This document shows positions 643-48,878 of a stretch of DNA of 49,200 nucleotides, piece by piece. Position numbers and translations under genes: made by a program. Positions within the stretch are counted from its first letter, which is position 1, and each line of letters starts with the position of its first letter. The DNA comes from Octopus sinensis (Eukaryota), in assembly GCF_006345805.1 (NCBI RefSeq), contig NW_021834546.1, forward strand, positions 1 to 49,200, written 5' to 3'. The notes beneath the pieces were generated by a model. The model made no database searches. It worked only from the letters and a program-made list of their open reading frames with translations, and had not been told where the DNA came from.

Positions 643-690
<48 letters not shown>

Positions 691-758
691 ATATATATAT
701 AAATACACAACACACACACATTATTATATATATATATATATATATACCTCAGACGAAA

Positions 759-6028: not shown

Positions 6029-6117
6029 ATAATAGAAAAGTTAAAATTAAAATAACAATTAAAAAGTAAAGATTAAGTAAATTACAAAAATAATATAATG
6101 TATATAATAGGTAGAAA

Positions 6118-6204
6118 AACGACATGTGTTTCGCTTCTATATTTAAGAAATGATTATAGTAGTAGAGAAATCACTTGCATATAAATATAGTCGCTCATCA
6201 GGTT
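6118..6204 (-). ncRNA. Type I minimal hammerhead ribozyme in inverted pLTR
   Basis: AAC-CTGATGA-GCGACTATATTTA...TAAATATAGAAGC-GAAAC-ACAT-GTC-GTT: core, long stem II, short stem III, GUC site, 3-bp stem I. Confidence 0.7.
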
Positions 6205-6248
6205 AAAAATATAATAGAACAATTAATTAATAAATATACTTTGATATA

Positions 6249-11013: not shown

Positions 11014-11051
<38 letters not shown>

Positions 11052-11086
11052 GTATATTTATTAATTAATTGTTCTATTATATTTTT

Positions 11087-11173
11087 AACCTGATGAGTGA
11101 CTATATTTATATGCAAGTGGTTTCTCTACTACTATAATCATTTCTTAAATATAGCAGCAAAACATATGTCGTT
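11087..11173 (+). ncRNA. Hammerhead motif in 3' pLTR, G12 mutated to A
   Basis: AAC-CTGATGA-GTGACTATATTTA...TAAATATAGCAGC-AAAAC-ATAT-GTC-GTT; palindromic stem III ACATATGT. Confidence 0.6.
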
Positions 11174-11579
11174 TTTCTACCTATTATATACATTATATTA
11201 TTTTTGTAATTTACTTAATCTTTACTTTTTAATTGTTATTTTAATTTTAACTTTTCTATTATATGTAATTTTCTAGATGGTGTAATTTAATTATTCATTT
11301 TGAATTGAAAAAGGTGCTTTTTTCTAATATTTTGTATATATATTATATTGTGTGGAATTTGATTTAGTATTTCTAAATTGAATTCTTTTTCCTTGTAAGT
11401 TTGGATTTTATTCCCTCAAATAATAATTATATATATATATATATTAATCAGCCGAAATTGCGAAGATGATCTGGTTCTTGACTGATGACTGAGAGCTTCG
11501 AAAGTCCCGTCTGTGTGTTTTTTTGCCGTCTTCAAAATGTTTCACGTTCTTGTCCCAGTTTGTGTTTTTTTAACGTTTA

Positions 11580-13537: not shown

Positions 13538-14203
13538 TTATAGAATAGTCCTTCTGAATAGGATCTGGATGTTACTCCATTCGGACTTTCGGTTGAGAGT
13601 AGGTTTGTATTCTTGTATACAAACAGCTTCTGTGACCTGTCTCAACATTGCATCGGTGGGATGTGTTGATAGGATGTTCAACTTAAGTTTCCCTAAGGAT
13701 CCTTTGTGGCAGTCTACAGCATGTTGGTAGAAGATGGAGTTTGGCTTCCTTTCAATGTAGTTGTCCAGGTATTCTTTGAACCTATCATTGATGCTTCTAG
13801 AAGTCTCACCTATGTATGACTCTGGGTTAGTCGCGCAAGCTCCCTCCTGGCACTTAATCTGGTATACAGTGCCCTTGGTTTTGCAATTTACATGTGGATT
13901 TGTCGAACATACTGCACAATTACTTTGACAGGTGATTCTATCAAATGGATATGATCTGCATAATGCCGATTTGATAGTCCTACCTGTCTTTTCTACAACT
14001 TTAATTTTTTAGGCCAGTAGTGCGCAGGATTTTCTTGAATGCCTTACTTAGCTCGTTCTTAGGTGTGGCATCAACGAACATTACTCTGTGAAATCTCCTG
14101 TTATCGTACCAAGTAACGTTTCTCATCCTTTTGTTGGTGTCCCTCTCTAACCTATTCCAGAACTTGTTGCGGTATAGGGGGCATATACCGTTTTCGTCGT
14201 TCC
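13538..14203 (-). mobile_element. 5'-truncated PLE (Neptune-like Cys-rich linker), GIY-YIG C-terminus
   Basis: PLYRNKFW...WY...VMFVDATP...KIKVVEKTG...C-x3-C-x2-C...GTVYQIKC...YIGETSRSINDRFKEY...QHAVDCH...EAVCI...LNRKSEW; CCHH residues present; one +1 A near 14005. Clade label is inference. Confidence 0.85.
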
Positions 14204-15399
14204 TTGGTACGATAACAGGAGATTTCACGGAGTAATGTTCGTTGACGCCACACCTAAGAACGAGCTAAGTAAGGCATTCAAGAAAATCCTGCACACTACA
14301 TATAACCCACTGTCTGCCAAACTTTTAAGAGGTGAGGAAGCATTGGAGGAGGTGGTGAACAAAAGGTTATAGTGAGACAGATACAGATGTCTTGCTGTAG
14401 AGGAAGTACATGGTTACCAGGCTGGAAAGAGAAAGATCAGGAATAAAGACAGAAACAAGTGTGCTACCACAAAGAAAATACATGGTAGCCCAACTTGAGG
14501 GAAGTGCAAGAGATAGAGAGAGAGAGAGAGAAAATGGGAGATTGCAGGATAGAGATAATGGCAAAATGCCAGGCATACTCACAAGGAATGGGGATCAAGT
14601 ATAAATGAGATGGTTGAGTAAAGGAAGAGAGAGATATAGATAGTGGTAAGTGACAGGATATTATGAAGGGAGTACGAGTAAGTGGCGAAAGACCTGGGTA
14701 TATATACAGTTGGAGGGGCTACTGGGTAGCAATGACACAGAGGAACAGGGGTGTGAGGACAAGATTGGGGAGTGAGAGCTAGGCATAGTGAATGAAGGAG
14801 GAAATGTGAGAAAGAGATGAGTTGTAAATTGATTTGTTGGGGTAGGGTGAGGGAAACGTTTTCTTGTTAAATGTGGGTGGAACACCCAGATGGCAATAAT
14901 AGAGTGAGAAAAGGCATGTAGGGGCAAGTAGAGAGCAATGATACAGTGGCACTGGGCCAAGAGGACAAGATTGGGAAGTCGGAGGTAATCATAGTATATG
15001 AAGTGGAAATATGAGGAAGAGAAGGGATGAAGAGATGTAGTTTGGTTTGTTGTGGTAAAGTGTGTGAGAAGTTTTCTCATTATAGTAACAATAAAATAAC
15101 ATTGTTTTATGAACATAGATAATATAATACAATAATAATGTTTTTAGTGAGAAGGATGTAATTGATTTTGAGAAAGAATTTTGTCAAAATGCAGCTCTAA
15201 ATTAATTAAACAAATATGTAACTTCTCATCTACCACCTGTAATCATTCCTGTTTTTTTTTTTTTTTTACTTCATTTCCATATGCACAGAGATAACTAATT
15301 TGCAAAGGTACAATGATCCAAAGGGCGACAGAGATTTAATGGCTGTAGTAGTTAATTGAGGATATTGGCTCCAAAGTAAAATCCAAAATTCTGACAATT

Positions 15400-23899: not shown

Positions 23900-24185
23900 C
23901 TATATGGTGTCAGTAAGTAGAAATTCTGAATTTGAAGGTTTTACACTTGATGATATACGAAATGTAAAAGGAAACAAAATAGTGAGTGGTCTTCAGATGA
24001 ATCTGATATTGATATTAATGAAGTTTCATCAGATGATGATGAAGATTTCGACAGTGAGAGTGAAGAAAATGACAACATTCAAAACATTACAGCAACATGG
24101 TTGAAAATTACATCAACCACAATTCCAGGTTCTACAGAAAAGACTGGTCCATAACACAATTTACCTCCTGATGCTCAACACTTGA
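23900..24185 (+). pseudogene. Possible piggyBac-type transposase N-terminal acidic region
   Basis: NSEFEGFTLDD...SSDESDIDINEVSSDDDEDFDSESEE...W...TGP..LPP resembles PGBD N-termini; no TTAA ends or catalytic domain seen. Confidence 0.35.
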
Positions 24186-24187
24186 GT

Positions 24188-24472
24188 TCATCATCATCAT
24201 CATCATTTAATGACCACTGTCCATGCTGGCATGGGTCGGATGGTTTGACCAGTGCTGGCAAGCTTGGAGGCTGCACTGGACTACAGTCTGATTTGGCATG
24301 GTTTCTATGACTGGATGCTCTTCCTAACGCCAACTACTCTGAGAGTGTAGTGGGTGCTTTATATGTCACTGGCATGACATTTGCATGACACTGGTATCTG
24401 TCAAGACTGCGATTTTACTTGGCTTGATGGGTCTTCTTCTGAAGCATAGCATAATGCCAAAGGTCTTGGTCA
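24188..24472 (-). mobile_element. RTE 3' end, left half of a copy split by the TIR transposon
   Basis: (CAT)n tail and RTE 3' UTR ending ...GCCAAAGGTCTTGGTCA; continues at 32377 as CTCGGTCATTTGTCATTGCC. Confidence 0.75.
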
Positions 24473-24829
24473 GGTCAAACTAAAGTGTTTGACCAGAGCA
24501 AAAAATAAATTAAAAACTAGTGTAATAGGTGTAAAATAAAAATGCACTCACGAACGGGGGTGGGGGAGAGGACTCGGAAAGTTCACATCGTGAATGTTCC
24601 AAGTCATCTCACCACAGCCCCCCAAAAAAATGGTGTAATAGGTGTAAAACAACTTGCTGTAAACAAATATAAAAAAAAATGTGTGCTCATGAACAGGGGT
24701 GGAGAGAGGACTCGGAAAATTCACATCGTTAGACCATGACCATTAAACTCCAGTGTTTGACCCGAGCAAAAATAAATTAAAAATTAGTGTAATAGGTGTG
24801 CAACAAATGAGGCATTTGGCTATTGTGAA

Positions 24830-26665
24830 TATTGACTTTGCCAATTCTTTCCCTCTTATCATGGTGGGCGGTCTCACTCATACCTCGTCATTAGTGACAT
24901 GCACAAACACAGCACTACAAAAAAGTCATTCCTGGGGCGACTCCCACTGTCCCACCAAGGGAACATGTGAACCACCTTATAATTTTAGTTACTGCTAGTC
25001 ATCATACAGGGGTCCTGCCTGCAAGACCCCTATGCTGAGAGCTAATCTCTCAGCATATTCTATGTGTGTAGCATAGCCATCCTGCTGAGTAGTCATCAGA
25101 ATGACCTGTCCTTAATGCCCAAGCCATCTAGCGCCGCACTCACAGGCCAGCACCAGGCACCACAGGCACTGATTGGGAGTCCATGCAGTTCTACCAGCTG
25201 ATCAAACTCTTGCAAAAGCAATAGTATAACTGGTCAATACTTGTGCACTTTCTCAAGAGATGCCTCTCTCAAGGCATCTCCCTCCTCTAACCAGATGGTC
25301 ATGTCTACTACTACTACTTTCTCAGGACAGCTAAAGACTAAGTCAGGTATGAGCCTGGAGCCTCACACAATGTACGAAGGCTCCACACTGATACTCCAGC
25401 CATAGGCAGCAGCTTCTTTCGCTACCAGATTACAGATTTTGTTGTGTCTGGCAAGTCGTGGCCCTTTAAGAGCACCACAAACTCTGCTGATGTGAGATAT
25501 TGTCTCCACCCCTACTCTACACTTTGGACGCATGAAGACCCCTCGGCTACCACGTATCATGGTCTCTCGAGTGGGAAATATGTTGGAGCGCATCTTGAGT
25601 AAACTCAAGAAACACTTCTCTGTAATCCCACCCAGTCTACTTATCCAACTATTGCCAACCACATCCCCACAAAATGCTGCTACACATGCCCTGTGCACCA
25701 GCTGGGCTTGCCCATCTATGGGAGTGCACCAGCCAGATATCAAGGTCGTGTTTGGTAGCATCAGCAAGTTGAAGGAAGCTACTAATTGCTGATTCTGTTC
25801 AGCTAATCCGGCAGAATCAGCAATCTTTTTCACAAAGGCGTATCTCGACATCAGAAGGCGAAGATTACAGCGGATGATACATTTGGGGATCAGCCTCACC
25901 ATCTGGTGAAGTCTTAACCTGCTATCACACCGGCTGCTATATAGAAAGTAAGAAGTGGTATCTGGGAGATGAAGAATCCACCTAGCTCCCACACAGATAA
26001 CCATGTCAAGTCTCTTGAGAATTCCTCACCTGCTTGAGACTATAAAATAGTCTTGGCAAATTGTACTGCTGTAACAAGAGGAATTTCTGTCAGGGTTTCA
26101 GTGGAGCCCTGCAAATCTTATCAATATCCAGGGACACCTGCCCCACTGAATCTAAACAAAATTCCTGACTCGAGCTCGAAGTCCATGTAGGAACATTAAG
26201 TCCTAGGTTGGACATCTCTCCCGGTTCTACCTTTTTCATCGCACTACCATGGAGAGTGTTAGAGTGTTGACAAGACAGGACTTGCCCCAGCCACAAATGG
26301 AGAACCACTCACACTTACTAATATTGATTCCCAGCCCAACTGCGCGATAGAACTCCAGGCATCTATTCATAAGAGCCTGGAGACTATCACGTAACCCAGC
26401 GACTAGGACCAAATTGTCAGTGTATGTGAGTTCTTCTATTCTGATCCCCTCAACACTGAGACCTTCGCTGTCCGACAGAACATCTAACAGTGGGTTGGTT
26501 GCAATGTTAAAGAGGACTGGCAAGAGTGCGTCCCCTTGTCTAACACCCTGGCGAATCTTGATGGGCTCGCTAAGTTGCCCACTGACTGAGAATCTGGTAA
26601 TGCTACTTTCATAGATCCCCTCCACGAGCACTATAACGTGCTCATGGAAGCCAAGCCTGGCAGGA
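24830..26665 (-). mobile_element. R2-superfamily (RLE) non-LTR element, 5'-truncated and decayed
   Basis: RT QGVRQGDALLPVLFN...YTDN...GINISKC; knuckle CRVGVETISHISRVC; RHNKI; RLE motif RLIPDLVF...VVDMT...EKVHKY. Confidence 0.85.
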
Positions 26666-26769
26666 CCCATTCCTGTAAAGAATGGTGTCAAGCAGGATGA
26701 CATCCTTGCCCCGACTATCTTTTCTTTGTACTCTGCTGCTGCTTTTACTCATGTTATTGCTAAGGTTAG

Positions 26770-28850
26770 CTCTCTGGGAATACCTGGACAAGGACATCAT
26801 TTACGAGGCACCCATTCAGGCAGGTAAGAAGAATATTTGCCAGAACCTTGCCAGCAGCTGATAGTAGAGCAATACCTCTAAAGTTACCACACATTGTTCT
26901 GGCTCCTTTTCCTTTATAGAGAGGAAGAATAATTGCATCCTTCCAGTCCTTAGGTAGTGCACCATTCCTCCAGACTGCACTAATAAGTTCGTGAAGGGAC
27001 TGTATGATGTAATCACCACCAAATCGCAAGACCTCAGCACAAATTCCATCCTTTCCAGATGCCCTATCAAGATTCAAATTACTTACTGATATCATTACTT
27101 CATCTATTGAGGGCGTGGAATTTAAGGAGCCAATGATAGGTCTTTGTTGCATAGTATCCATCACTATTTCATCCACAACTGACTCATGGTTTAGGAGTTC
27201 AGGGAAGTGTTCGATCAAGCAACCTGCAATTTTTGTTGATTTAGTAGTTAGAGTGGAAGACTTCTTGGAAAGCAAAGGAGCTGATGTGGAGCTCTTAGGC
27301 CCATAAACTTGCTTCATAATGTGGTAAAGCTTCTTGCTGTCATTTGCATCAGCAGCAGCCTAAACATCACGAGCATGATCCTCCCACAAAGTGTTCTGTA
27401 CCCTCCTGAGAGATCACTGCAGTAATGATTTTACACTGATATAGTGGACAAGTACTAGATTTCACTGCACAACAGAAAGTCCTCCATGTAGCAATACATT
27501 GTGGGCATTGCGCTTTACAGCCAATAGTCGATGAACTTCAGCATCATTTACATCAAACCAGTCTCTGAGTTTGGCAGTAGCATATCCCAGTGCTTCAGCA
27601 GCATTTTGAAGAACCTGGTCTTGAAAATCTTCCTATGTTGCAGTATGCGAGTCAGAAGCTCTTTCCTCAACACAGCATCATATATCTCATGGACATTCAG
27701 ACGCCGAGAAATGCTGACAGGCCCTCTTCCCGCTTTCACTGTAATCATCATCAGGAAGTTTGCTCATACCAGACTGTGGTCTGTCCAGTATTCCGATCCA
27801 TGAAAGAACTTGACATTACAAATGTCATAGATGTCACGCTTGTGGATGATGACATAATCCAGTAAGTGCCAAACTTTAGGCCTTGGATGCATCCATGTTG
27901 TCGTGTGATCACCTTTGTGTATAAAATGAGTGCTTGCAAATGTAAAGTCCATGTTCATCGCAAAGCTCAAGCAGCATGAGACCATTACTACTCATTTTCT
28001 CTACTGGAAAACATTCTAGAGAGTTCTATGTTTGCCAGTCAGTTCCAACCCTGGCATTGAAATCCCCCAGTAGAACAACCTTATCAGAATTAGGGATTTT
28101 CATAAGTATGGCTCTCAACTAGGTATAAAAAATACTTGTATTTTCATCACAGCTAGTCAAAGTAGGTGCATAGGCACTTATTAGAATAGCAAACTATCCA
28201 CCTTTCAGGTGAAATCGCAGAGTCATTAGATGTTCATTTATAGGAAGAGGAAGCTCCTCCAACTTCTTAAGGATATCAGATCGAACTGCAAAGCTAACAC
28301 CAGCTTTTCTGCACGCCCCCTCCATTTCCCAGAAAAGGTGTATCCACCTCCAACTTCCTCAAGCTGACCATCACCTTCTATACAAGTCTCTGAAAGTGCA
28401 GCTATATCAATGTTATAATAGTTCAGCTCATGAACAACAAATGCAGTGTGTCTTTCAGGCCTACAATCCCTCTTGTTATCCAACAGAGTGCGCACATTCC
28501 TACATGAAATGTTTAAGTTCCATCCAAATTTTGTAAATAAAAGTCTCTTTGTTTTTTGAGTGCAGGGTGGACATCTGTCAGTCACACTAAACTGACCAGA
28601 TATAGAAAGACAGGCAATTTTTGGTTCACCTTTATTAGAACCTCCCCAGCCTCTGGGTGAGCAGTGCCCTCTCCAAATGGAGTTGCTCAGACACTGATGA
28701 AGCAATAGAATCCTACCGCTGTCTTGTGCGACAAGGAGACGGCTTTATATCTAGCATGGGCTGTTTGCGTGCAGGTCGCTGACTATATGCTTCCAACCCT
28801 TCAGGTCTGCATGCTTCACCACCTTCCCATCACCACAGGACTTCCGAATA
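26770..28850 (-). mobile_element. RTE-BovB-like LINE 5' portion (EN to start of RT), 3'-truncated
   Basis: RNVRTLLD...RPERHTAFVVHELNYYNIDIAALSET; WHLLDYVI; WTDHSLV; KQVYGPKS; GNFRGIALLSAAGKVLA. Confidence 0.85.
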
Positions 28851-29028
28851 AAAAGAAATGTACAAAAAATATATAAATATATATACTAAAAATAAAATAA
28901 TGGGAAAAAAACAAAAAAAAACGCACATATCGAGCAGAGGTCAGCAATGCCTGTGCAGAGTTTTAGGTTCAATAAGGCTGGCACAACACCTCACAGACCC
29001 TGTCCACTTTATTGACATTATCCCTCCT

Positions 29029-29081
29029 CACAAAACTATCTGACGAATGGGAATGTGAAACTCTGAGTAACAGGTTTTGTG
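29029..29081 (+). ncRNA. Degenerate hammerhead motif
   Basis: CACAAAAC-TAT-CTGACGA-(collapsed stem II)-GAA-ACTC-T-GAGT-A-ACAG-GTTTTGTG. Confidence 0.35.
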
Positions 29082-29381
29082 ATATTTTTGCTGCTTTTTA
29101 ATAAAGCATATTACTCTACCTCTGGTATTCGAGTACTATTTTTTTCACCTTGTTTCGCATTTATGTGCTTACTCTGGTGTGTGTATATATATATATGTGT
29201 GTGTGTGTACATATGTACAAGCACATGCAATCATATAAACACATATACACACTCATATATATATGTATAATCTTAAAGTATACACATATATATGCTTATC
29301 CATCTACACATATATGTCACTATTTTCACAGACAATGGTTAAAACTGAAAAATTTTTTTATACATATACATATATACATAC

Positions 29382-29429
<48 letters not shown>

Positions 29430-29441
29430 TATAATATATAT

Positions 29442-29769
29442 ATATATAGAAAATAGTAAAAAGTGAAAAAACTACAGAAGGTTTAAAGGTTAAAAAATAT
29501 ATATTTAAGTCAATATGTCTGAAGAATATTAAAAATTTTTTTCTTACAATGACATAGTTTAGAAGAAAGACCAGTTTCGCATTTAGCTTTTCAAATTTCT
29601 TAACGTCGTAAGAAATTTGAAAAGCTAAACGCGAAACCGGTCTTTCTTTTAAACTATGTCATTGTAAGAAAAAATTTTTTAATATTCTTCAGACATATTG
29701 ACTCAAATATATATTTTTTAACCTTTAAGCCTTCTGTAGTTTTTTCACTTTTTACTATTTTCTATATAT
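29442..29769. repeat. 328-bp near-perfect palindrome, 6-nt loop at 29603-29608
   Basis: Arms match by eye along their whole length with few substitutions. Confidence 0.92.
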
Positions 29770-29816
29770 TCAACCACGTGCTTTCACAAACCAACTTTCT
29801 TATCTATATATATATA

Positions 29817-30380
29817 TCATCATCATTGTTTAACGTCCGCTTTCCATGCTAGCATGGGTTGGACGGTTCAACTGGGGTCTGGGGAGCCCGAAGGCTGCAC
29901 CAGGCCAGTCAGATCTGGCAGTGTTTCTACAGCTGGATGCCCTTCCTAACGCCAACCACTCTGAGAGTGTAGTGGGTGATTTTATGTGCCCCCGACACAG
30001 GTGCCAGACGAGGCTGGCGAACGGCCACGCTCGGATGGTATTTTTTATGTGCCACACCGACACAGGTGCCAGACGAGGCTGGCGAACGGCCATGATCGGA
30101 TGGTGTTTGTTACATGCCCACAGCACGGAGGCCAGTCGATGCGGTACTGGCTACGGCCATGTTCGGATGGTTTTCTTATGTGCCACCGGCACTGGTACCA
30201 CAAAGATACAAATTCCATTGATGTTCATCTATTTTGATTTGGTTTTTGGTTTTCACTTGCCTCAACAGGTCTTCACAAGTGTCACAAGAAGGAAGGTATG
30301 CACAGGTGGACTGACTACGTCCCAGGTAGGGGCCACGGGTTATGGCCTCACTAGTCTTGCCGGGTCTTCTCACGCACATA
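29817..30380 (-). mobile_element. 5'-truncated RTE 3' end with tandem 3' UTR repeats
   Basis: Reverse complement of 40910-41558 (YAVREKTRQD*, UTR repeats, GAT tail). Confidence 0.85.
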
Positions 30381-31000
30381 TACATATATTTACACACATA
30401 CTCATACACACACATATACTCACACAACACACACACATACATAGGTACGCTAAAATATACATACATCTTGAAGCTGGCTGGATGTGGTGTGCCATATCAA
30501 GTCAATACAATGTAGCCCACTACTAAATGTAGCATATAAATGTAACACTTCGAGGTTGGAGTAACCAGCGAACATCAAATAATTAACACCAAGAAGGAAG
30601 AAATGTTATTTACATATATTTATTCCCTTACCCCACAGGTTGTTAAAGAGCCAGTAGCAATTCTAGTGATAGTGATGACAAGGATGACTTGCTGGTTAAT
30701 AGTTGATATGATTGTCTGTCAGTAGAGAGTGAAAGACTAAGGTAGCCATGGTGCTGATTAGAAAGGAAAACAGGATAAAAGCAGCATTGTCTTTCTTATG
30801 GCCGAACGCCTCTCTTAGCATGTGAAGGGTGAATGGAAGTGCTGCTCTTGGTTAAGGCTGATGCAAAACATAATTTCTGTAATTCATTGTGGTAGCACAC
30901 ATTTCTCTTTGAGAATGTTTTCTGACACACGGTTTCTATTTTATTATTACTTATATTCCACCGCTTCATCATTTAATGGGAGAAAAGTACTGAAGAAATA

Positions 31001-31046
<46 letters not shown>

Positions 31047-31047
31047 C

Positions 31048-31148
31048 TTGTTGTTTATACCCAAAAAATGGACTTGTTATTTATACTCAAGAAATGGACT
31101 TGTTTGTGCCCAAGAAATGGATTTGCTGTTTGTACCCAAGAAATGGAC
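31048..31148. repeat. About 26-bp minisatellite, 4 imperfect units
   Basis: Units resemble TGTTGTTTATACCCAAGAAATGGACT; no spacers between them. Confidence 0.75.
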
Positions 31149-31491
31149 AACGCACAGGTTATACTTATTTCTATAACATCATTCTCTATTAGTAAATTTC
31201 GTTTCTTGTAACAATTTAAAGGAATGTTAAAGACAAGTTATTTTAATAACATGAACTGTCTGGATAAAGAATCAAATAAAAGAAAATGAAAAACAGTGGA
31301 AGGTTTTGTAATTAGGAGCAGAGTAAGGTTGAATATCTAAAAGAATTTGCAACATGTAAGATGTTTGTAAGCAATTCCATAACAACAAAAACCGTTCCTT
31401 TCACTGGAACATTTAAATTTCGTTTGTGTCTAAATATTTTCATTCTTTGAAACCACGGAAATACCCTGACAAAAATTTGTGCTACATCTGT

Positions 31492-31534
31492 TTTGTCAGT
31501 GAACAAGTCTCGGTTTCAAAGCGACAAAAATATT
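31492..31534 (+). ncRNA. Second, degenerate G3:C8 hammerhead-like copy
   Basis: TTTGTCA-GTGAACA-A-GTCTC...GCGAC-AAA-AATATT; G12 and the stem I 3' strand are lost. Confidence 0.4.
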
Positions 31535-32376
31535 GGGATTGAAATGAGATTTAAATCTTGGAGTGAAACCAAATTTGTGTGTGTGTGTGTGCATATGTTC
31601 TTGAGTGGTATACAAACATCTACGCTGCAATTGTTTTTGTTAATACCATTATGTAGAAGACAGAATCGAAAAAATTTTGCGCGCAAATTTTTGTTTTCAT
31701 CTTTGTTTATAGCATAGATAATTTTTTCTGAAATGCCACCTTTGGCCTGCAGGACGCATTGGTTGGCCTGAGGCAATAGTTGAAAACACTTACTGGCAAA
31801 CAGGGGCGGAGGACCAGGAGAATTCACACGATCCAATTTTTACCCTATAGAAAATGGATATTCTTTCTAACCACAAGGTTCCAGGTACAGTCCCACTGCA
31901 TGGCACCTTGGGGAAACACTGGAGTTTAAAGGTCAAGGTCTGATGATGTTAACTTTCCAAGTCCCCCCCTGTTTGCAAGCGCGCATTTTTTTCCACATAC
32001 ATTTAAAGCAAGTTGTTTTATACCTATTACACTAAATTTTAATTATTTTTTTGCTCAGGTCAAATGCTAGAGTTTAAAGATCATGGTCTGACGATGTGAA
32101 TTTTCCGAGTCCTCTCCCCCACCCACCGTTCACAAGTGCGCATTTTTTTTAATATTTGTTTACAGCAAGTTGTTTTACACCTATTACACTATTTTCTTTT
32201 TTGGCTGTGGTGAGATGACTCGCAACATTCATGATGTGAACTTTCCAAGTCCTTTCCCCCACCTCCCATTAGCGAGCGCACATTTTTTTCCATATTCATT
32301 TACTACATGTTGTTGTACACCTATTACACTGATTAAAAAATTTTTATTTGCTCAGGTCAAGCACTTTAGTTTAACA

Positions 32377-33080
32377 CTCGGTCATTTGTCATTGCCTCTG
32401 TGAGGCTCAACACTTGAAGGGTGCTTTTGAAGTACCACTGGCATTGGCCACTTCATCTCTGTGAGGCCCAATGCTCAAAATGGCACCCATGCTACTGGCA
32501 TGGGTGCCATTTATGTGACACCAGCATTGGCCACGACTACAATTTGACAAGTCTTCTCAAGTGCAGCATACCACCGAAGTCACTAGTCACTGCCTCTGTG
32601 GGGCCCAAAGTTTGAAGATCATGCTTCACCACTTTGTTTTCCTGAGTCTACCTCTACCGCAAGTTCCCTCCACAGTTAGAGATCAGCACTTCTTTACCAG
32701 TGCAGTCAGCTCTCTTGCACACCACATCTGATATCTCTTATGCCCAACTTTTCTCTCAAGATGCATACACTTTTGAACATGCACACTGACGTTGTACATC
32801 CAACGAAACATACTTGCTTAATTTCTTTCAAGGTTACACATGTCTTTGGCTGTCACAGCCCAGGTTTCACTGCTGTATAGCAAAGATGTTTGTACATAGG
32901 CATCATATAATCTCCTTTCACTCTGAGGGAGAGGTCCTTTGTTGCCAGCAGAAGTAGGAGCTCTCTGAACTTTGCTCAGCCCATTCTTATTCTCACAGCT
33001 ACAGTCTCAGAGCATCCACCTCCGCTACAAACTTGGTCATCTAGATAATGGAAGCTATCTACTACCTCTAGCTTACCCAA
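32377..33080 (-). mobile_element. RTE copy, right half (UTR and ORF C-terminus)
   Basis: Continues the UTR broken at 24472 and runs into RT C-terminal sequence (GRGR-like, ETWAVT-like, YLDDQV-like). Confidence 0.75.
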
Positions 33081-33495
33081 AACTATCAGAGGAAATAAAC
33101 AGATATCCCAACAAATTTCTATTCATGGCAGAAATACAAGCTTTTTTTTACTATAAAATAAGTCTCTCAGCAGTTGCTCACTGTCATAAATAGAATATTA
33201 CTTCCACATCTCAGACAATGCCAACACAATCATTAAGCCTTCTCTCATTATCCAAATTGTCTACTTCCCTACCTTCATTCAGGTTTTGTACTAATTATCA
33301 TACCCAATTCCTCAGAATGTTAGCACTCTTGAATAATTTCTTTGTCCATGTTTTTCCAGCAGCCATTGGCTTGAAGCTGTTCAATAACATCAATCTCAAT
33401 GATTTTAGAGAATTAGGAAGGCCATGAGCACAGCCCTAGCCTATACATTGAACCATTAAAAATACTGGTAGTAAAAAAAAAAAAAGAGCAAATAC

Positions 33496-38908: not shown

Positions 38909-39072
38909 ATATAATGTTAGGTATATTTGCCATCTCAATATGGCTAACCACAAGGGTGGGTGTTACTGTAGCCCCAGGAGAACATCTTCTCCAGCTGGCT
39001 TTAGGCACACTTTCTGCACCCTATCGGTATTTGCAAAGGGAGGTCATCCTTCCCTCGTCAACCTAAGTGATA

Positions 39073-39117
39073 CGCACGGACTGCAGTTTCTCGGTACTGA
39101 CCCGTCATCAGCGCACG
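39073..39117 (-). ncRNA. Minimal hammerhead motif (third family)
   Basis: CGTGCG-CTGATGA-CGGGTCAGTACCGA-GAAAC-TGCA-GTC-CGTGCG; 6-bp stem I with two G.U pairs, palindromic ACTGCAGT; stem II base non-canonical. Confidence 0.6.
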
Positions 39118-39407
39118 ACAATCACCGGTTTTTGATGAAAGGAGTCCCAATGCAAATATTTATATCCTTTTTCCAGTAACTTTTCGTCACTGATCTTGAA
39201 AAAGTGTATACAAGCAATAATAAATCTCTGAACGAGGTATAAACAGTAACTGCATGACAATGTGAGGTATATTTGCCACCTCAATATGGCTAACCACTAA
39301 GGGTGGGTGTTACTGTAGCTTGTAGCCCCAGGAGAACATCTCCTCCAGCTGGAAAAAGGATATAAATATTTGCATTGGGACTCCTTTCATCGAAAACCGG
39401 TGATTGT

Positions 39408-39452
39408 CGTGTGCTGATGACGGGTCAATACCTAGAAACTGCAGTCCGTGCA
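39408..39452 (+). ncRNA. Minimal hammerhead motif, inverted copy of 39073-39117
   Basis: CGTGTG-CTGATGA-CGGGTCAATACCTA-GAAAC-TGCA-GTC-CGTGCA. Confidence 0.55.
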
Positions 39453-39678
39453 TATCACTTAGGTTGACGAGGGAAGGATGTCCTACCTTTGCAAATACTG
39501 ATAGGGCACAGAAAGTGTGCCTATAGCCAGCTGGAGAAGATGTTCTCCTGGGGCTACAAGCCTACAGTAACACCCACCCTTAGTGGTTAGCCATATTGAG
39601 ATGGCAAATATACCTCACATTGTCGTGCAGTTACTGTTTATATCTCGTTCAGAGATTTATATATATATATATATATAT

Positions 39679-41558
39679 CAATACCTAGCCAAAGATAAGC
39701 CCCTGTACCTGGCTTTTGTTGACATGGAGAAAGCCTTTGACAGGGTCCCCTGATCCCTTATCTGGTGGTCAATGAGAAAACTAGGGATAGATGAATGGTT
39801 AGTGAGAGCTGTGCAAGCCATGTACAGAGACGCTGTAAGTAAGGTGAGGGTTGGCAACGAGTACAGTGAAGAATTCCGGGTAGAGGTTGGGGTCCACCAA
39901 GGTTCAGTCCTCAGTCCCCTCCTATTTATCATAGTCCTCCTGGCAATAACGGAGGAATTCAAGACAGGATGCTCCTGGGAGCTCCTCTATGCTGATGACC
40001 TTGCTCTAATTGCTGAGTCACTATCAGAACTGGAGGAGAAGTTTCAGGTGTGGAAACAAGGATTAAAATCGAAGGGCCTTAGAATCAACCTAGCCAAAAC
40101 CAAAGTCCTAATAAGTAGGAAGGTAGACCAATCACAAACGACTTCAGGTAGATGGCCCTGCTCGATCTGTAAAAAAGGTGTAGGTAGAAACTCTATAAGG
40201 TGCACCAAGTGTAAGCTATGGACACATAAGAGGTGCAGCAATGTCAAAGGAAGGCTAACTAGGAAAATAGTTTTTGTCTGTGGCAGATGCTCAGGTGTAA
40301 TAAACACTGGAAATGTGCAGAGACCAACTTCTGCCACGTTCCAGGGAGACAAACTAGAAGTAGTTGATAGCTTCCGCTACCTAGGTGACCAAGTCTGAAA
40401 GTGTGCTGAAAGTGTAACTGCTAGAGTAAGAATAGCCTGGGCAAAGTTTAGAGAGCTCTTACCCCTGCTGGTGACAAAAGGCCTCTCGCTCAGAGTAAAA
40501 GGCAGACTGTATGATGCATGTGTACGTACAGCCATGCTACATGGTAGTGAAATATGGGCCGTGACTGCTGAGGATATGCGTAAGCTCGCAAGAAATGAAG
40601 CCAGTATGCTCCAATGGATGTGTAATGTCAGTGTTCATAATCAACAGAGTGTAAGTACCTTGAGAGAAAAGTTGAACCTAAGAAGCATCAGTTGTGGTGT
40701 GCAAGATAGACGTTTGCGCTGGTATGGTCATGTGACAAGAATGGCTGAAGATAGTTGTGTGCAAAAGTGCTACACCCTAGCAGTTGAGGGAACCTGTGGA
40801 AGAGGTAGACCCAGGAAAACCTGGGACGAGGTGGTGAAGCATGACCTTCGAACTTTAGGTCTCACCAAGGAAATGACTAGAGACCGAGACCTATGGAAGT
40901 ATGCTGTGCGTGAGAAGACCCGGCAAGACTAGTGAGGCCATAACCCGTGGCCTCTACCTGGTATGTAGCCAGTCGACTTATACGTACCTTTCCTTCTTGG
41001 GACACAAAACTCCACTTGTGAAGACCCGTTGAGGCAAGTGAAAATCAAATCAAATCAGATATCAGAAAGCAGAACCAAAATCGAAGTCGATCAACATCAG
41101 CTGTGATACCAGTGCCGGTGACAAGTAAGCGAACCATCCGATTGTGGCTGTTGCCAACGCTGCCCCGACTGGCCTCCGTGCCGGTGGCACGTAAAAAGCA
41201 CCATCTGTTCGTGGCCGTTGCCAGCGCCGCCCCGACTGGCCTCCGTGCCGATGGCACGTAAAAGCACCATCCGTTTGTGTCCGTTGCCAGCCTCGCCTGG
41301 CCCCCGTGCCGGTGGCACGTAAAAGCACCATCCGTTCGTGGCCGTTTGCCAGCACCGTATGGCACCTGTGCGGGTGGCACGTAAAAAGCACCCACTACAC
41401 TCGCGGAGTGGTTGGCGTTAGGAAGGGCATCCAGCCATAGAAACACTGCCAGATCAGACTGGGCCTGATGCAGCCTTCTGGCTTCACAGACCCCAGTTGA
41501 ACCGCCCAACCAATGCTAGCATGGAAAGCGGATGCTAAATGATGATGATGATGATGAT
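39679..41558 (+). mobile_element. 5'-truncated RTE LINE, younger subfamily, complete 3' UTR
   Basis: DMEKAFDRV, VGVHQGSVLSP, YADD, PHD-like insert, YLGDQ, GRGRPRKTW, tandem UTR repeats, (GAT)n tail. Confidence 0.92.
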
Positions 41559-44454: not shown

Positions 44455-44640
44455 TTTACTTGCTTACTGCGGCCAGCATGGCACCACCTTTAGTCAAAGA
44501 AATTGACAACAGGATTTATTCTTTGTAAGCATAGTACTTATACTATCTGTGTTTTTAGCATACGGCTAAGTTATAGGGACGTAAACACAGCAACATCGGT
44601 AGTCAAGTAACGGAAGGGGTACAAACACAGACACACAAAC
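44455..44640 (-). mobile_element. 3' half of the SINE family seen at 47229
   Basis: Reverse complement matches 47415-47600 (TAAGTACT..CTTACAAAGAATAA..GACTAAAGGTGGTGC). Confidence 0.6.
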
Positions 44641-44751
44641 ACACACATACATGCATATATATATACACACACACATATATAAATATATATATATACACAA
44701 GTATATATATATACCTACATATATATATATATATATGCGCATGTATATATA

Positions 44752-45048
44752 ACGTGATCATGTGACCGACCAGACCATCAGATGTTGTTACACATCACTG
44801 GTCACAATGCATTCGCATTGTTTCAGCCTTCGAATGACGCCACCCCGCTGGCTAAGCGAGCAGGCCAACAGAAGAAAGAGTGAGAGAAAGTTGTGGTGAA
44901 AGAGTACAGCAGGGATCACCACCCCCTGCCGGAGCCTCGTGGAGCTTTTAGGTGGTTTCGCTCAATAAACACTCACAACGCCCGGTCTGGGAATCGAAAC
45001 CGCGATCATGCTACCGCGAGTCCGCTGCCCTATCCACTAGGCCATTGC
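44752..45048 (-). mobile_element. tRNA-derived SINE (Arg-like head)
   Basis: GCAATGGCCTAGTGG (A box), CTCGCGG loop, GGTTTCGATTCCC (B box), then a non-tRNA body. Confidence 0.8.
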
Positions 45049-45295
45049 ACATGTATATATATATATATGCATGTATATGCGCATGTATATATATATGTAT
45101 GTATATGCGCATGTATATATATATATATATGTATGTATATGCGCATGTATATATATATAATATATATATATATACATGTATATATACACAAGTATATATA
45201 TATATATATATACACACATGTATATATACACAAGTATAAATATATGTATATATATATATGCAGGAATATAAATATACATGTATATATATATATGA

Positions 45296-45341
<46 letters not shown>

Positions 45342-45347
45342 CATATA

Positions 45348-45621
45348 CAAATTAGTAATAAATGGCACAACTAAGTACCGATATTTACTGGAAATAGCGA
45401 ACGTAAAAATACGACGCTAATGTGTAGCTTCACCGCGTATGTATTAGCAAAAATGCGTGTGTGCAACAAAATAGAGAAAAAAAAACGTCTTACCTCCAGG
45501 GAGAACATCTGAAAGATGAAACACCCGGAAAGTGGATAATGTGGTACCTGCAGGTTTCAGGTTTTGCAAGATATGTCTCTTATATATCGGTACTTAGTTG
45601 TGCCATTTATTTACTAATTTG
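45348..45621. mobile_element. MITE with ~37-bp TIRs
   Basis: CAAATTAGTAATAAATGGCACAACTAAGTACCGATAT ... ATATCGGTACTTAGTTGTGCCATTTATTTACTAATTTG. Confidence 0.8.
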
Positions 45622-45711
45622 TGTATTTTTCCCTCACGGGCTACTTTTTACTGGAAGGCAATACTTTGTATTGCATTACTGATATATATACATATATATA
45701 TATATATGTAT

Positions 45712-47215
45712 GTATGTTTGGTTTCGTGCCAGGAAATGCACCACTGGTGCCATATTTCTGGTGAGACAGCTGCAGGAGAAATACCTAGCCAAGGATAAGC
45801 CCCTGTACCTGGCTTTCGTTGACATGGAGAAAGCCTTTGACAGGGTCCCCCGATCCCTTATCTGGTGGCCAATGAGGAAACTAGGGATAGATGAATGGTT
45901 AGTGAGAGCTGTGCAAGCCATGTACAGAGACGCTGTAAGTAAGGTGAGGGTTGGCAACGAGTACACTAAAGAATTCAAAGTAGAGGTAGGTGTCCACCAA
46001 GGTTCAATCCTCAGCACCCTCCAATTTATCATAGTCCTCCAGGCAATAACGGAGGAATTCAAGACAGGATGCCCCTGGGAGCTCCTATATGCTGATGACC
46101 TTGCTCTAATTGCTGAGTCACTATCAGAACTAGAGGCAAAGTTTCAAGTGTGGAGACAAGGATTAGAATCGAAGGGCCTAGCTAAAATCAAAGTCTTAAT
46201 ATGTAGGAAGGCAGGCAAATCACAAATGCCTTCAAGTAGATGGCCCTGCTCGATCTGTAGAAAAGGCGTAGGTAGAAACTTTATAAGATGCACCAAGTGT
46301 AAGCTATGGACACATAAGAGGTGCAGCAATGTCAAAGGAAGGCTAACTGGGAAGATAGTTTTTGTCTGTGGCAGATGCTCAGGAGCAATAAACACTGAAA
46401 ATGGTCAGAGACCAACTTCCGCCACATTCCAGGGAGAAAAACTAGAAGTAGTTGATAGCTTCTGTTACCTAGGTGACCAAGTCAGTAGCGGGCGTGGGTG
46501 TGCTGAAAGTGTAACTGCTAGAGTAAGAATAGCCTGGGCAAAGTTCAGAGAGCTCTTACCTCTGCTGGTGACAAAAGGCCTCTCACTCAGAACAAAAGGC
46601 AGACTGTATGACGCATGTGTATGAACAGCCATGCTACATGGCAGTGAAACATGGGCCGTGACTGCTGGGGATATGCGTAAGCTCGCAAGAAATGAAGCCA
46701 GTATGCTCCGATGGATGTGTAATGTCAGTGTTCATACTCGACAAAGTGTAAGTACCTTGAGAGAAAAGTTGGACCTAAGAAGTATCAGTTGTGGTGTGCA
46801 AGAGAGACGTCTGCACTGGTATGGTCATGTAGCGAGAATGGATGAAGATAGTTGTGTGAAAAAGTGCCACACCCTGGCAGTTGAGGGAACCTATGGAAGA
46901 GGTAGACCCAGGAAAACCTGGGACGAGGTGGTGAAGAACGACCTTCAAACTTTAGGTCTCACCGAGGAAATGACCAGAGACCGAGACCTTTGGAAGAATG
47001 CTGTGCGTGGTAAGACCCAGCAGGACAAGTGAGACCATAACCCGTGGCCTTTACCTGGGACGTAGCCAGCCCACTTATGCATACCGTTCCTTCTTGTGAC
47101 ACAAACCCTACTTGTGAAGACCTGTTGAGACAAGTCAAAATCAAAATCAAAATCGAAATCTTTCAACATCAATGGAAATTGTAGCTGTGATACCAGTGCC
47201 GGTGGCAAGTAAGAG
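45712..47215 (+). mobile_element. RTE LINE copy, truncated at both ends, same subfamily as 39679-41558
   Basis: ORF 45710..46624 with YADD and PHD-like insert, then 46631..47032; 3' UTR stops at the first repeat unit with no GAT tail. Confidence 0.92.
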
Positions 47216-47228
47216 ATATATATATATA

Positions 47229-47620
47229 GGAGTGGCTGTGTGGTAAGTAGCTTGCTAACCAACCACATGGTTCCGGGATCAGTCCCACTGCGTGGCATCT
47301 TGGGCAAGTGTCTTCTGCTATAGCCCCGGGCCAACCAATGCCTTGTGAGTGAATTTGGTAGACGGAAACTGAATGAAGCCTGTCGTATATATATATGTGT
47401 GTGTGTGCTTGTATGTCTGTGTTTGTCCCCCTAGCATTGCTTTACAACCGATGCTGGTGTGTTTGCGTCCCCGTCACTTAGCGGTTCGGCAAAAGAGACC
47501 GATAGAATAAGTACTGGGCTTACAAAGAATAAGTCTCGGGGTCGATTTGATCGACTAAAGGTGGTGCTCCAGCATGGCCGCAGTCACATGACTGAAACAA
47601 GTAAAAGAGTAAAAAGAGTA
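47229..47620 (+). mobile_element. Full-length tRNA-derived SINE with LINE-like 3' stem-loop
   Basis: TGGCTGTGTGG A box, GGGATCAGTCCC B-box-like, internal microsatellite, GGTGGTGCTCCAGCATGGCCG-CAGTC-ACAT-GACTG-AAAC, (GTAAAAGA)n tail. Confidence 0.85.
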
Positions 47621-48067: not shown

Positions 48068-48700
48068 AACAGGAGAAACTAGAAGTAGTTGATGGCTTCC
48101 TCTACCTTGGTGACCAAGTCTGTAGTGGGGGTGGATGCACAGAGTGTGTTACCACTAGAAGAAGACTAGCCTGAGCAAAGTTCAGAAAGCTTCTACCCAC
48201 TACTGGTGACAAAGGGCCTATCATTCAGAGTGAAAGGTAGAATGTATGATGCATGTGTGTGAACTGCCATGCTTCACACCAGTGAAACATGGGCCGTGAC
48301 TGCTGAAGACATGCGTAGACTCAAAAGAAATGAAGCTAGCATGATCTACTGGAAGTATAATGTCAGTGTGCACAAATGACAAAGTGTAAGAGCCCTGAGA
48401 GAAATGTTAGACATAAAGAAGCATTGGATGTGGCATGCAAGGGGGACGTTTGCATTGGTATGGTCATGAGGAGAGCTGTGTGAAGAAGTGCCACTCCTAA
48501 AACAGTGGAAGGAATCTGGGGTAGAGGGAGACCCAGGAAGACATGGGACGAAGTGGTGAAGAATGACCTTCAAACGTTGGACCTCACAGAGGCAATGACA
48601 AAAGACTGACACCTCTAGAGGTATGCTGTAACTAGAAGACCTAGTGTTGCAAAACCAGCCCACTCAAAAGTACCTTGGATCATAGGGCAACATGCCGTGC
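48068..48700 (+). mobile_element. Decayed RTE 3' fragment
   Basis: KLEVVDGFLYLGDQV, SETWAVT, GRGRPRKTW. Confidence 0.85.
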
Positions 48701-48749
48701 TTGAGGAGACCTATTAATTTAATACAGTTCTATATTTACGAGATGAGGA

Positions 48750-48878
48750 ATTTGACGGATATTTGTCTTCATCTTTTTTGTTGTTAACACACCATTTCGG
48801 CTGATATACCCTCCAGCCTTCATCAGGTGTCTTGGGAAAATTTCGAACCGGGGTTCTCATTCCTAAGGTATTTTTCGA

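What the first reader, a model, noticed from the sequence alone, without database searches (positions are those of the whole stretch)
24465..32384. Hidden 7.9-kb long-TIR DNA transposon that splits an RTE and carries nested cargo
Seen: an RTE 3' UTR breaks at 24472 and resumes at 32385, flanked by an 8-bp TSD with one mismatch. The ends are inverted repeats of at least 330 bp built from 2-3 tandem ~130-150-bp units (GTGTAATAGGTGTAAAA...GAGGACTCGGAAAGTTCACATC). Inside are R2-like, BovB-like and RTE pieces, hammerhead repeats and about 1.4 kb of unassigned sequence (30530-31920); I found no transposase. Known: 8-bp TSDs fit hAT, P or Merlin. Inference: GG-start TIRs with internal repeats suggest Merlin or an unclassified foldback-type family.
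Basis: partly seen in the sequence, partly recalled or inferred. Interest (0 to 1): 0.7.

Follow-up and report, generated by a model that had tools for sequence, protein, structure and literature searches.

The report
Old long-TIR DNA transposon, no transposase
A 7.9-kb piece of DNA bounded by 330-460-bp inverted repeats and an 8-bp target duplication really did insert into an older RTE retrotransposon, but it is an old, decayed, non-coding cut-and-paste transposon of a familiar "foldback-like" kind whose superfamily cannot be named from this single copy.

Summary
Window 24473-32376 is bounded by inverted arms (left 24473-24806, right 31914-32376). The arms are collinear over about 336/366 bp at 85.7% identity and are built of the same order of ~115-157-bp units. 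The flanks carry the 8-bp repeat CTTGGTCA/CTCGGTCA, whose one mismatch is CpG decay. Joined with one TSD copy, the flanks align without a gap across the junction to three other RTE copies in the window, which is a paralogous empty site. The unit occurs nowhere else in the 49.2 kb, and neither arm has a TSD of its own.

The interior has no transposase domain. It holds an R2-clade LINE half with its 28S junction, an APE-type LINE half, an RTE 3'UTR piece, SINE pieces, microsatellites, a 328-bp palindrome and about 1.3 kb of unassigned DNA. Rfam finds no hammerhead.

Best reading: an old non-autonomous foldback-like class II element moved in trans by a transposase that makes 8-bp staggered cuts. 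Merlin, Mutator/foldback, P/Galileo and hAT all remain possible. Whether the interior was carried cargo or accreted later is unresolved. No other copy was found in any collection I could search. I rate it an ordinary kind of element and of low-to-moderate interest.

The parts
24186..24472 (-). Host RTE-derived sequence, left part: 3' tail with (ATG)n at 24186-24205, then 3'UTR up to the insertion point
   Evidence: Matches the RTE 3' ends at 41557-41379 and 29816-29987. Contiguous with 32385 onward when compared with the paralogues.
24465..24472 (.). Left copy of the 8-bp target-site duplication, CTTGGTCA
   Evidence: Read. It occurs once in the paralogous RTE copies.
24473..24806 (+). Left TIR arm: terminal 47 bp (GGTCAAACTAAAGTGTTTGACC...), unit 1 (24520-24632, with a 26-bp deletion relative to the right arm), unit 2 (24633-24786) and the first 20 bp of unit 3
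24807..24822 (-). 16 bp of 28S rDNA (TAGCCAAATGCCTCAT on the minus strand; 15/16, with the mismatch being CpG decay). This is the canonical 3' flank of an R2 insertion, and it abuts the arm.
   Evidence: Exact 14-mer, the top 28S-downstream hit in the whole window. The 28S reference was typed from my memory of the conserved LSU region.
24823..26750 (-). 3' half of an R2-clade LINE: RT motifs 3-7, CCHC/RLE C-terminal region and 3'UTR, with frameshifts
   Evidence: RVT_1 E=1.8e-10. PDB R2 proteins E=1.4e-13 for the RT part and 5.7e-21 for the C-terminal part.
26769..28744 (-). 5' half of an APE-type LINE: endonuclease remnants, linker and RT N-terminal part. It is 3'-truncated and fused in the same orientation to the R2-clade half.
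   Evidence: L1 ORF2 hits E=5e-6. 28% identity, E=4e-12, to the window's LINE ORF2 aa 430-581. Weak Exo_endo_phos match, E=0.03.
29178..29448 (.). TG/TA/TACA microsatellite tract
29442..29769 (.). 328-bp near-perfect palindrome (161-nt arms, 96% complementary, 6-nt loop). Probably a young secondary insertion of another foldback or MITE family into (TA)n.
   Evidence: I1; I3.
29809..30378 (-). 5'-truncated RTE 3'UTR fragment of the same family as the host RTE. It is flanked by TA-rich microsatellite, with a possible low-complexity TSD.
   Evidence: No hammerhead match.
30471..31755 (.). Unassigned non-coding sequence, with (AT)n at 30998-31043 and a 26-bp x 4 tandem repeat at 31047-31148
   Evidence: No Pfam hit, no repeat match elsewhere in the window, tandem repeats.
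31756..31915 (.). Two head-to-head fragments of a tRNA-type SINE: 31756-31816 on the minus strand (diverged) and 31863-31915 on the plus strand. The plus-strand fragment is 3'-truncated exactly at the inner edge of the right arm.
   Evidence: Alignment to the full SINE copy at 47229-47420.
31914..32376 (-). Right TIR arm: unit 3 (31914-32033), unit 2 (32034-32190), unit 1 plus the terminal 47 bp (32191-32376; the end reads ...GGTCAAGCACTTTAGTTTAACA)
32377..32384 (.). Right copy of the 8-bp target-site duplication, CTCGGTCA
   Evidence: Read.
32385..33400 (-). Host RTE-derived sequence, right part: the rest of the 3'UTR (with an internal duplication of the GTCATTGCCTCTGTGAGG block) and the decayed RT C-terminal ORF

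Best explanation
Window 24473-32376 is one old, inactive copy of a non-autonomous class II (cut-and-paste) transposon of the foldback-like type.

Shown:
- It entered an RTE-derived 3'UTR as a single insertion unit and duplicated 8 bp of target.
- Its two ends are collinear inverted arms of about 334 and 463 bp, built from the same series of ~115-157-bp units.
- Each arm carries an internal copy of the terminal ~56 bp.
- It encodes no recognisable transposase.

Inferred:
- It was moved in trans by a DDE-type transposase that makes 8-bp staggered cuts.
- That transposase probably bound repeated sites in the units. The invariant GTGTAATAGGT core is the best candidate, by analogy with the secondary binding sites in Galileo and Tetris TIR repeats.
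- The arms were near-identical at insertion and have since diverged by about 0.16 substitutions per site. The one CpG-decay mismatch in the TSD fits that age.
- The 7.1-kb interior is non-functional filler. It is a patchwork of retroelement fragments joined to the arms by illegitimate junctions, not by TPRT junctions. Part of it was probably present when the element last moved or was captured during gap repair. Other parts (the 328-bp palindrome and the RTE tail fragment in microsatellite) were probably inserted later.

The superfamily is undetermined. Merlin and Mutator/foldback are the leading candidates.
For: - TIRs: (85.7% over ~336 bp; E=1e-78).
- Collinear unit order in both arms, with 16 invariant columns.
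- Terminal 56 bp repeated internally at 91%.
- 8-bp TSD and gap-free paralogous empty site against three RTE copies. Both TSD copies share a private A.
- No other copy of the unit in the window by BLAST or by a six-unit nhmmer profile at E<=10, so the arms are not independent solo insertions.
- No transposase domain in any stop-to-stop frame of 40 aa or more.
- Illegitimate inner junctions (a 28S flank on the left, a 3'-truncated SINE on the right).
- Literature. Foldback elements with TIR-internal tandem repeats, a non-coding middle and 8-10-bp TSDs (Tetris, PMC4079207). TIR tandem repeats expand and contract independently in the two arms and hold secondary transposase sites (Galileo, PMC3573991). 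Merlin has 24-462-bp TIRs, a terminal GG and 8-9-bp TSDs, and is abundant in Octopus bimaculoides (PMC8101967).
Against: - Only one copy is available. Repetitiveness in the genome, a family consensus, a TSD-length distribution and an autonomous partner are all untested.
- The arms make up only about 10% of the element, whereas classic foldback elements are mostly arm.
- The outermost 4 bp of the two ends match at only 2 of 4 positions (GGTC vs TGTT).
- The transposase-binding role of the units is an analogy, not a result.
- Tandem Repeats Finder does not score the arms as arrays.
Confidence: 0.8

Rival explanations
1. Merlin superfamily. The element is a non-autonomous Merlin (IS1595/IS1016-related DDE transposase).
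For: The TSD is 8 bp. TIR lengths of 334-463 bp lie within the reported Merlin range of 24-462 bp, and the left end starts GG. Merlin transposase-like sequences are unusually abundant in Octopus bimaculoides (191 sequences; PMC8101967). The closest named relative of a LINE in this window is from Octopus sinensis.
Against: The right end reads TG, not GG. No DDE_Tnp_IS1595 remnant was found inside. None of the met features is exclusive to Merlin. The source organism is only inferred.
Confidence: 0.3
2. Mutator/foldback, P/Galileo-like, hAT or another 8-bp-TSD superfamily (Zisupton, Novosib). The element is a foldback-type derivative of one of these.
For: Most foldback elements with TIR-internal tandem repeats and 8-10-bp TSDs have been assigned to Mutator (PMC4079207). 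Galileo, of the P superfamily, has long TIRs with tandem repeats whose number differs between the two arms, as seen here (PMC3573991). An 8-bp TSD is the hAT and P norm; that last point rests on my own knowledge.
Against: Mutator TSDs are usually 9 bp and Galileo's are 7 bp. hAT TIRs are short and begin YARNG, which these ends do not. No MULE, THAP, P or hAT domain was found inside.
Confidence: 0.45
3. Composite (macro-)transposition. Two separate short elements or arrays in inverted orientation flanked about 7 kb of ordinary genomic DNA (rDNA/R2 debris, LINEs, SINEs, microsatellites), and a transposase acting on the two outer ends moved the whole block as true cargo. FB-flanked transposing elements and Ac/Ds macrotransposons work this way.
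For: Each arm contains an internal copy of the terminal ~56 bp. The interior is an unrelated patchwork joined to the arms by illegitimate junctions. The LINE decay inside is about as old as the arm divergence (my estimate from the segment lengths and the distance).
Against: Neither arm has an inward-facing terminus or a TSD of its own (the 8-mers were read). The 96% identical palindrome is clearly younger than the arms.
Confidence: 0.12
4. Not a transposon. A DNA fragment that happened to carry an inverted duplication was captured at a staggered double-strand break in the RTE, and fill-in repair created the 8-bp repeat.
For: There is no second copy, no transposase, and the outermost 4 bp of the ends are imperfect. 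The window holds several other inverted-repeat structures.
Against: The inverted repeats end within 0-4 bp of the duplicated target on both sides. The arms have an ordered, unit-based architecture typical of foldback TIRs, and the duplication is clean and exactly 8 bp.
Confidence: 0.05

Closest known systems
Tetris (and its MITE relative DAIBAM), a foldback transposon of Drosophila virilis (PMC4079207)
   Same: Long TIRs made of an outer domain plus internal tandem repeats partly derived from the terminal sequence. A variable, non-coding middle domain. TSDs of 8-10 bp. No autonomous copy known, so the superfamily can only be guessed from TSD length.
   Different: No sequence relationship was tested or is expected. 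The Tetris repeat unit is 220 bp and has spawned a satellite. Here the units are ~115-157 bp with only 2-3 per arm, and the middle is very large (7.1 kb) and full of retroelement debris.
Merlin superfamily (Feschotte 2004, as summarised in PMC8101967)
   Same: 8-bp TSD, TIRs up to 462 bp, GG at the (left) terminus, and abundance in octopus genomes.
   Different: No DDE_Tnp_IS1595 transposase is present, and the right terminus reads TG. Merlin TIRs are not generally described as arrays of ~150-bp units.
Galileo (P superfamily) of Drosophila (PMC3573991, PMC3688188)
   Same: Foldback-like long TIRs with internal direct repeats whose copy number differs between the two arms. The repeats are proposed as secondary transposase-binding sites. 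Many two-TIR non-autonomous copies exist.
   Different: Galileo makes 7-bp TSDs and has a THAP-type transposase. Here the TSD is 8 bp and there is no transposase remnant.
Pack-MULEs and filler-DNA-bearing internally deleted DNA transposons (my own knowledge)
   Same: Long TIRs enclose unrelated captured host or repeat fragments, joined by illegitimate junctions.
   Different: Capture is not demonstrated here, because there is only one copy and no parental locus. Pack-MULE TSDs are typically 9 bp.

Membership tests
Class II TIR (cut-and-paste) transposon | Terminal inverted repeats at the exact ends of the inserted segment | tested here: met
   Arms 24473-24806 and 31914-32376, 85.7% identity, E=1e-78. 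The outermost 4 bp match at only 2 of 4 positions.
Class II TIR (cut-and-paste) transposon | Target-site duplication of fixed length, with an empty site lacking the element | tested here: met
   8-bp CTYGGTCA repeat. Gap-free paralogous empty site in three RTE copies. No orthologous empty site was available.
Class II TIR (cut-and-paste) transposon | Multiple dispersed copies, each with its own TSD | not testable with these tools
   No other copy in the window. Nothing in the protein collection, or in the metagenome, prokaryote-genome or viral contigs. The source genome is not searchable here.
Class II TIR (cut-and-paste) transposon | A transposase gene, for an autonomous member | tested here: not met
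   No transposase domain in any frame. If this is a transposon, the copy is non-autonomous.
Foldback-like elements (FB, Tetris, Galileo-type architecture) | Long TIRs composed of tandem or direct subrepeats, with the arms variable in repeat number | tested here: met
   2.1 units on the left against 3 on the right, in the same unit order, with a 26-bp indel in unit 1.
Foldback-like elements (FB, Tetris, Galileo-type architecture) | Arms make up most of the element, with a short non-coding middle | tested here: not met
   The arms total about 0.8 kb of 7.9 kb. The middle is 7.1 kb of retroelement debris. The middle may be partly secondary.
Merlin | 8- or 9-bp TSD | tested here: met
   8 bp. Criterion from PMC8101967.
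Merlin | TIRs with a conserved terminal 5'-GG | tested here: inconclusive
   The left end reads GGTCAAAC. The reverse complement of the right end reads TGTTAAAC. With 14% divergence between the arms, the ancestral base cannot be called.
Merlin | DDE_Tnp_IS1595-type transposase in the autonomous partner | not testable with these tools
   Absent from this copy. The partner element cannot be searched for.
hAT | Short TIRs (about 10-25 bp) beginning YARNG, plus an 8-bp TSD | tested here: not met
   The TSD length fits, but the TIRs are over 330 bp and the termini read GGTCA/TGTTA. The criterion is from my own knowledge.
Mutator/MULE | Long TIRs with a 9-bp TSD (range 8-11) and a MULE transposase | tested here: inconclusive
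   Long TIRs are met. A TSD of 8 bp is at the edge of the range. No MULE domain was found.
   No Rfam hit at gathering score in the window, and no hammerhead at E<=1 in 24000-33000. The repeat is a 65-bp RTE 3'UTR tandem repeat.
R2 LINE (interior fragment) | R2-clade RT and C-terminal CCHC/RLE region, with insertion at the 28S TAGCCAAATGCC site | tested here: met
   PDB R2 proteins, E=1.4e-13 and 5.7e-21. An exact 14-mer of the 28S downstream flank sits at the expected 3' junction (the 28S reference is from memory).

The most novel reading that the evidence does not exclude
The element represents an uncatalogued cephalopod foldback family. Its arms are arrays of ~150-bp units, each carrying a copy of the terminal ~56 bp. 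Any unit boundary could therefore serve as a transposon end, and the family would pick up and move unrelated DNA. In this copy that DNA would be a chimeric APE-LINE/R2 retrocopy still attached to 16 bp of 28S rDNA, moved as true cargo in a Pack-type manner.
Probability: 0.12. Interest if true: 0.5.

Novelty: new member of a known kind. Interest (0 to 1): 0.25.

Why it matters
If the family proves to be repeated in the source genome, it would add a foldback-type DNA transposon to the cephalopod repeat catalogue and give annotators a long-TIR query they are likely to have missed. Such long inverted repeats promote hairpins, inversions and ectopic recombination, so copies could mark rearrangement hot spots. 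The nested-terminus architecture and the rDNA/R2 fragment inside offer a small test case for how non-autonomous elements acquire filler DNA. On its own, one decayed copy changes little, because the kind of element and its mechanism are already well known.

Tried and rejected
1. Finding other copies.
- Protein-collection search with the longest TIR reading frame found nothing.
- A 21-mer scan of metagenome contigs gave six chance hits that match only the 21-mer.
- A 20-mer scan of prokaryote-genome and viral contigs gave zero hits.
- Full-text search for TIR and SINE strings in papers gave zero hits.
- I ran no further search on another TIR frame. The best database hit to an intact LINE of this window is only 71% identical, so the source species and its close relatives seem not to be represented.

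2. Extending the TIR inward past 24806/31914. The score of 32 lies within the shuffle range.

3. Solo units or arm-specific TSDs. None were found.

4. Transposase remnants. None were found in any frame of 40 aa or more.

5. Hammerhead ribozymes. None were found.

6. A unit-like piece in plus orientation at 31778-31832 (nhmmer E=0.003). It overlaps a diverged SINE fragment, so I treat it as ambiguous.

7. SINE halves as complementary parts of one inverted SINE. Rejected, because the two fragments overlap in SINE coordinates.

8. A sense-oriented 28S stretch at 24880-25039. It is marginal: 11 of 500 shuffles reach the score.

9. A plus-strand RT motif at 26615-26824. Not supported.

10. A single 'Dualen-like' LINE carrying both APE and RLE. 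Rejected as the default reading, because the 5' half matches L1-type proteins and the 3' half matches R2-type proteins. A chimera is more likely.

11. Organism look-up by exact ORF. The ORF is not on record.
Full report
**What is there.** Reading the two boundaries and searching for repeats shows long inverted repeats at the ends of the stated interval.
- BLAST of 24440-24830 against the reverse complement of 31900-32410 gives a 272-bp core at 85% identity (E=1e-78), plus flanking pieces.
- A global alignment of 24473-24808 with the reverse complement of 32011-32376 has 288 matches, 48 mismatches (28 transitions) and 30 gap columns. That is 85.7% identity and a JC distance of 0.158.
- Attempts to extend the similarity further inward fail, with the score inside the shuffle range.
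- The arms are therefore 24473-24806 (334 bp) and 31914-32376 (463 bp).

**Architecture of the arms.** Aligning the six units shows that both arms have the same order:
- a terminal ~47 bp (GGTCAAACTAAAGTGTTTGACCAGAGC... on the left; TGTTAAACTAAAGTGCTTGACCTGAGC... for the reverse complement of the right end);
- unit 1, which ends in a short head-to-head hairpin;
- unit 2, which ends in a copy of the terminal sequence;
- unit 3, complete on the right but only 20 bp long on the left.

Every unit begins with an invariant GTGTAATAGGT core (16 invariant columns). The terminal ~56 bp recurs 268 bp further in at 91% identity. Because the two arms share unit order and unit types, the repeat structure predates their divergence. 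The unequal unit number and a 26-bp indel are the kind of independent arm change described for Galileo (PMC3573991). Tandem Repeats Finder does not report the arms, because there are too few and too unequal copies.

**Is it one insertion?** The flanks are RTE-derived. The left flank carries the (ATG)n-tailed 3' end (24186 onward), which matches other RTE 3' ends in the window. The right flank runs into a decayed RT C-terminus on the minus strand.
- Joining 24400-24472 to 32385-32450, so that one copy of the 8-mer is kept, gives a sequence that aligns without any gap across the junction to three other RTE copies, at 40750-41000, 46800-47050 and 48500-48750.
- The 8-mer occurs once in those copies and twice here: CTTGGTCA at 24465-24472 and CTCGGTCA at 32377-32384.
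- The single difference is a CpG-to-TpG change.
- Both copies share an A at the last base where all three paralogues have T, which is what a duplication of this particular target would give.
- Two random 8-mers match at 7 or more of 8 positions with probability about 4e-4.

This is a paralogous empty site with an 8-bp TSD. The host 3'UTR itself carries an internal duplication of the same block further right (32455, 32585). That complicates the RTE but not the junction.

- Solo units: BLAST with the left arm and an nhmmer profile of the six units find nothing else in the 49.2 kb at E<=10. The only exceptions are the hairpin inside unit 1 and one ambiguous weak hit next to the right arm. Neither arm has a matching 8-mer at its inner edge.
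- Different RTE subfamilies: the junction-spanning alignments argue against this.

Neither criterion is met.

**Interior.** No frame of 40 aa or more has any Pfam domain except RVT_1.
- On the minus strand, 24823-~26750 is the 3' half of an R2-clade LINE. The RT part matches PDB R2 proteins at E=1.4e-13, against 1.7e-4 for L1 ORF2. The C-terminal part matches at E=5.7e-21.
- Directly 3' of it, abutting the left arm, lie 16 bp (24807-24822) that are the antisense of 28S rRNA TAGCCAAATGCCTCGT. They match at 15 of 16 positions, and the mismatch is CpG decay. This is the canonical R2 3' junction. The exact 14-mer is the best 28S-downstream match in the whole window.
- 26769-28744 on the minus strand is the 5' half of an APE-type LINE. 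It matches L1 ORF2 at E=5e-6, the window's own LINE ORF2 at E=4e-12, and Exo_endo_phos weakly. It is fused in the same orientation to the R2 half, roughly in register within the RT. The most economical reading is a chimeric retrocopy made by template switching, but this is inference.
- Further right are microsatellites, a 328-bp palindrome with 96% identical arms, and a 5'-truncated RTE 3'UTR piece with a 65-bp tandem repeat.
- About 1.3 kb is unassigned. Two head-to-head SINE fragments follow, and the second is cut off exactly at the right arm.
- Rfam finds no hammerhead at gathering score or at E<=1.

**Cargo or later accretion?** Both inner arm edges are illegitimate junctions: a unit cut at 20 bp against a 28S flank, and a unit cut inside its terminus-like motif against a 3'-truncated SINE. 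These are not TPRT junctions into the arms. They fit either gap repair with filler capture, or deletion. The palindrome is clearly younger than the arms. The open stretches of the LINE fragments, about 100 codons on average, are roughly what about 0.08 substitutions per site would leave, so their age is similar to that of the insertion. One copy cannot settle the matter. My rough split is:
- 0.5 that a shorter foldback element was later enlarged or rearranged;
- 0.35 that most of the interior was already present when it inserted;
- the remainder for other histories.

**Mechanism.** Shown: an insertion with TIRs and an 8-bp TSD. Inferred: trans-mobilisation by a DDE transposase that makes 8-bp staggered cuts, with the unit cores acting as repeated binding sites. 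The inference rests on analogy with Galileo and Tetris. The copy is now old and inert.

**Comparison with known families.**
- Merlin fits on TSD (8-9 bp), TIR length (24-462 bp) and a terminal GG, though only on the left end. It is abundant in Octopus bimaculoides (PMC8101967).
- Foldback elements such as Tetris share the architecture and an 8-10-bp TSD, and are usually assigned to Mutator.
- Galileo shares the architecture but makes 7-bp TSDs.
- hAT fits only on TSD length.
- No transposase is available, so membership of any superfamily is untested.

The source organism is inferred to be a cephalopod, probably an octopod. The best named hit to a LINE ORF2 of the window is from Octopus sinensis at 54% identity, and the best overall hit is a 71% identical Logan contig. 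The SINE also resembles octopus SINEs as I remember them.

**External copies.** None were found in the protein collection or in the metagenome, prokaryote-genome or viral contigs, nor in full-text papers. These collections are not expected to hold this genome, so the negative result says little.

**Verdict.** The element is a new member of a known kind. The window also holds several other inverted-repeat structures, so such elements seem common in this genome. Interest is low to moderate.

Noticed in passing
window 29442-29769: A 328-bp near-perfect palindrome (161-nt arms, 96% complementary, 6-nt loop) sits inside a (TA)n tract. It looks like a young foldback or MITE of a different family, and its boundaries are blurred by the microsatellite.
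   Followed up: partly
window 24807-28744 (minus strand): The 3' half of an R2-clade LINE still carries 16 bp of its 28S rDNA target flank. It is fused in the same orientation, about in register within the RT, to the 5' half of an APE-type LINE. This may be a template-switch chimera, or a relocated piece of an R2-bearing rDNA unit.
   Followed up: partly
window 31756-31816 (-) and 31863-31915 (+): Two fragments of a tRNA-type SINE (full copy at 47229-47420) lie head-to-head. The second is 3'-truncated exactly at the inner edge of the right TIR arm.
   Followed up: partly
window 6029-6249 and 11042-11262: A second long inverted-repeat pair of about 221-238 nt, 94-97% identical, lies 4.8 kb apart. 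It is AT-rich, unrelated to the finding's TIR, and has no obvious TSD at the outer edges. It could be another long-TIR element or two inverted copies of a short repeat.
   Followed up: partly
window 38967-39660: A complex foldback of about 700 bp, with 210-nt arms (95%) and 99-nt arms (97%) interleaved. It looks like two inverted copies of a ~330-bp repeat.
   Followed up: no
window 597-4201 (+): A nearly intact LINE. ORF1 has a CCCH zinc finger (759-1439). ORF2 has an APE endonuclease and RT: 693 aa open, then one break, then 194 aa more. The best database relative is 71% identical (a Logan contig), and the best named relative is from Octopus sinensis at 54%.
   Followed up: partly
window 13541-14008 (-) and 14017-14299: An ORF with a GIY-YIG nuclease domain, as in Penelope-like elements, lies next to a 102-nt inverted repeat (96%).
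   Followed up: no
window 39754-40395 and 45683-46621 (+): The RTE-family ORFs carry a PHD-finger-like domain right after the RT (E=4e-5 to 6e-5, scoring at about the Pfam cut-off).
   Followed up: no
window 29980-30119 and about 41100-41400: The RTE 3'UTRs contain 65-bp tandem repeats whose copy number differs between copies. The unit has a CAGACGAG...CGAAC string that only loosely recalls the hammerhead core, and it gets no Rfam match.
   Followed up: yes
window 32385-32640: The host RTE 3'UTR to the right of the insertion repeats the block GTCATTGCCTCTGTGAGGCCCAA three times (32385, 32455, 32585). Either the UTR carries an internal duplication, or two RTE fragments abut here.
   Followed up: partly
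window 44550-45350: A dense cluster of mutually inverted ~100-130-nt repeats at 71-79% identity, which looks like a palindromic or tandem-inverted array.
   Followed up: no
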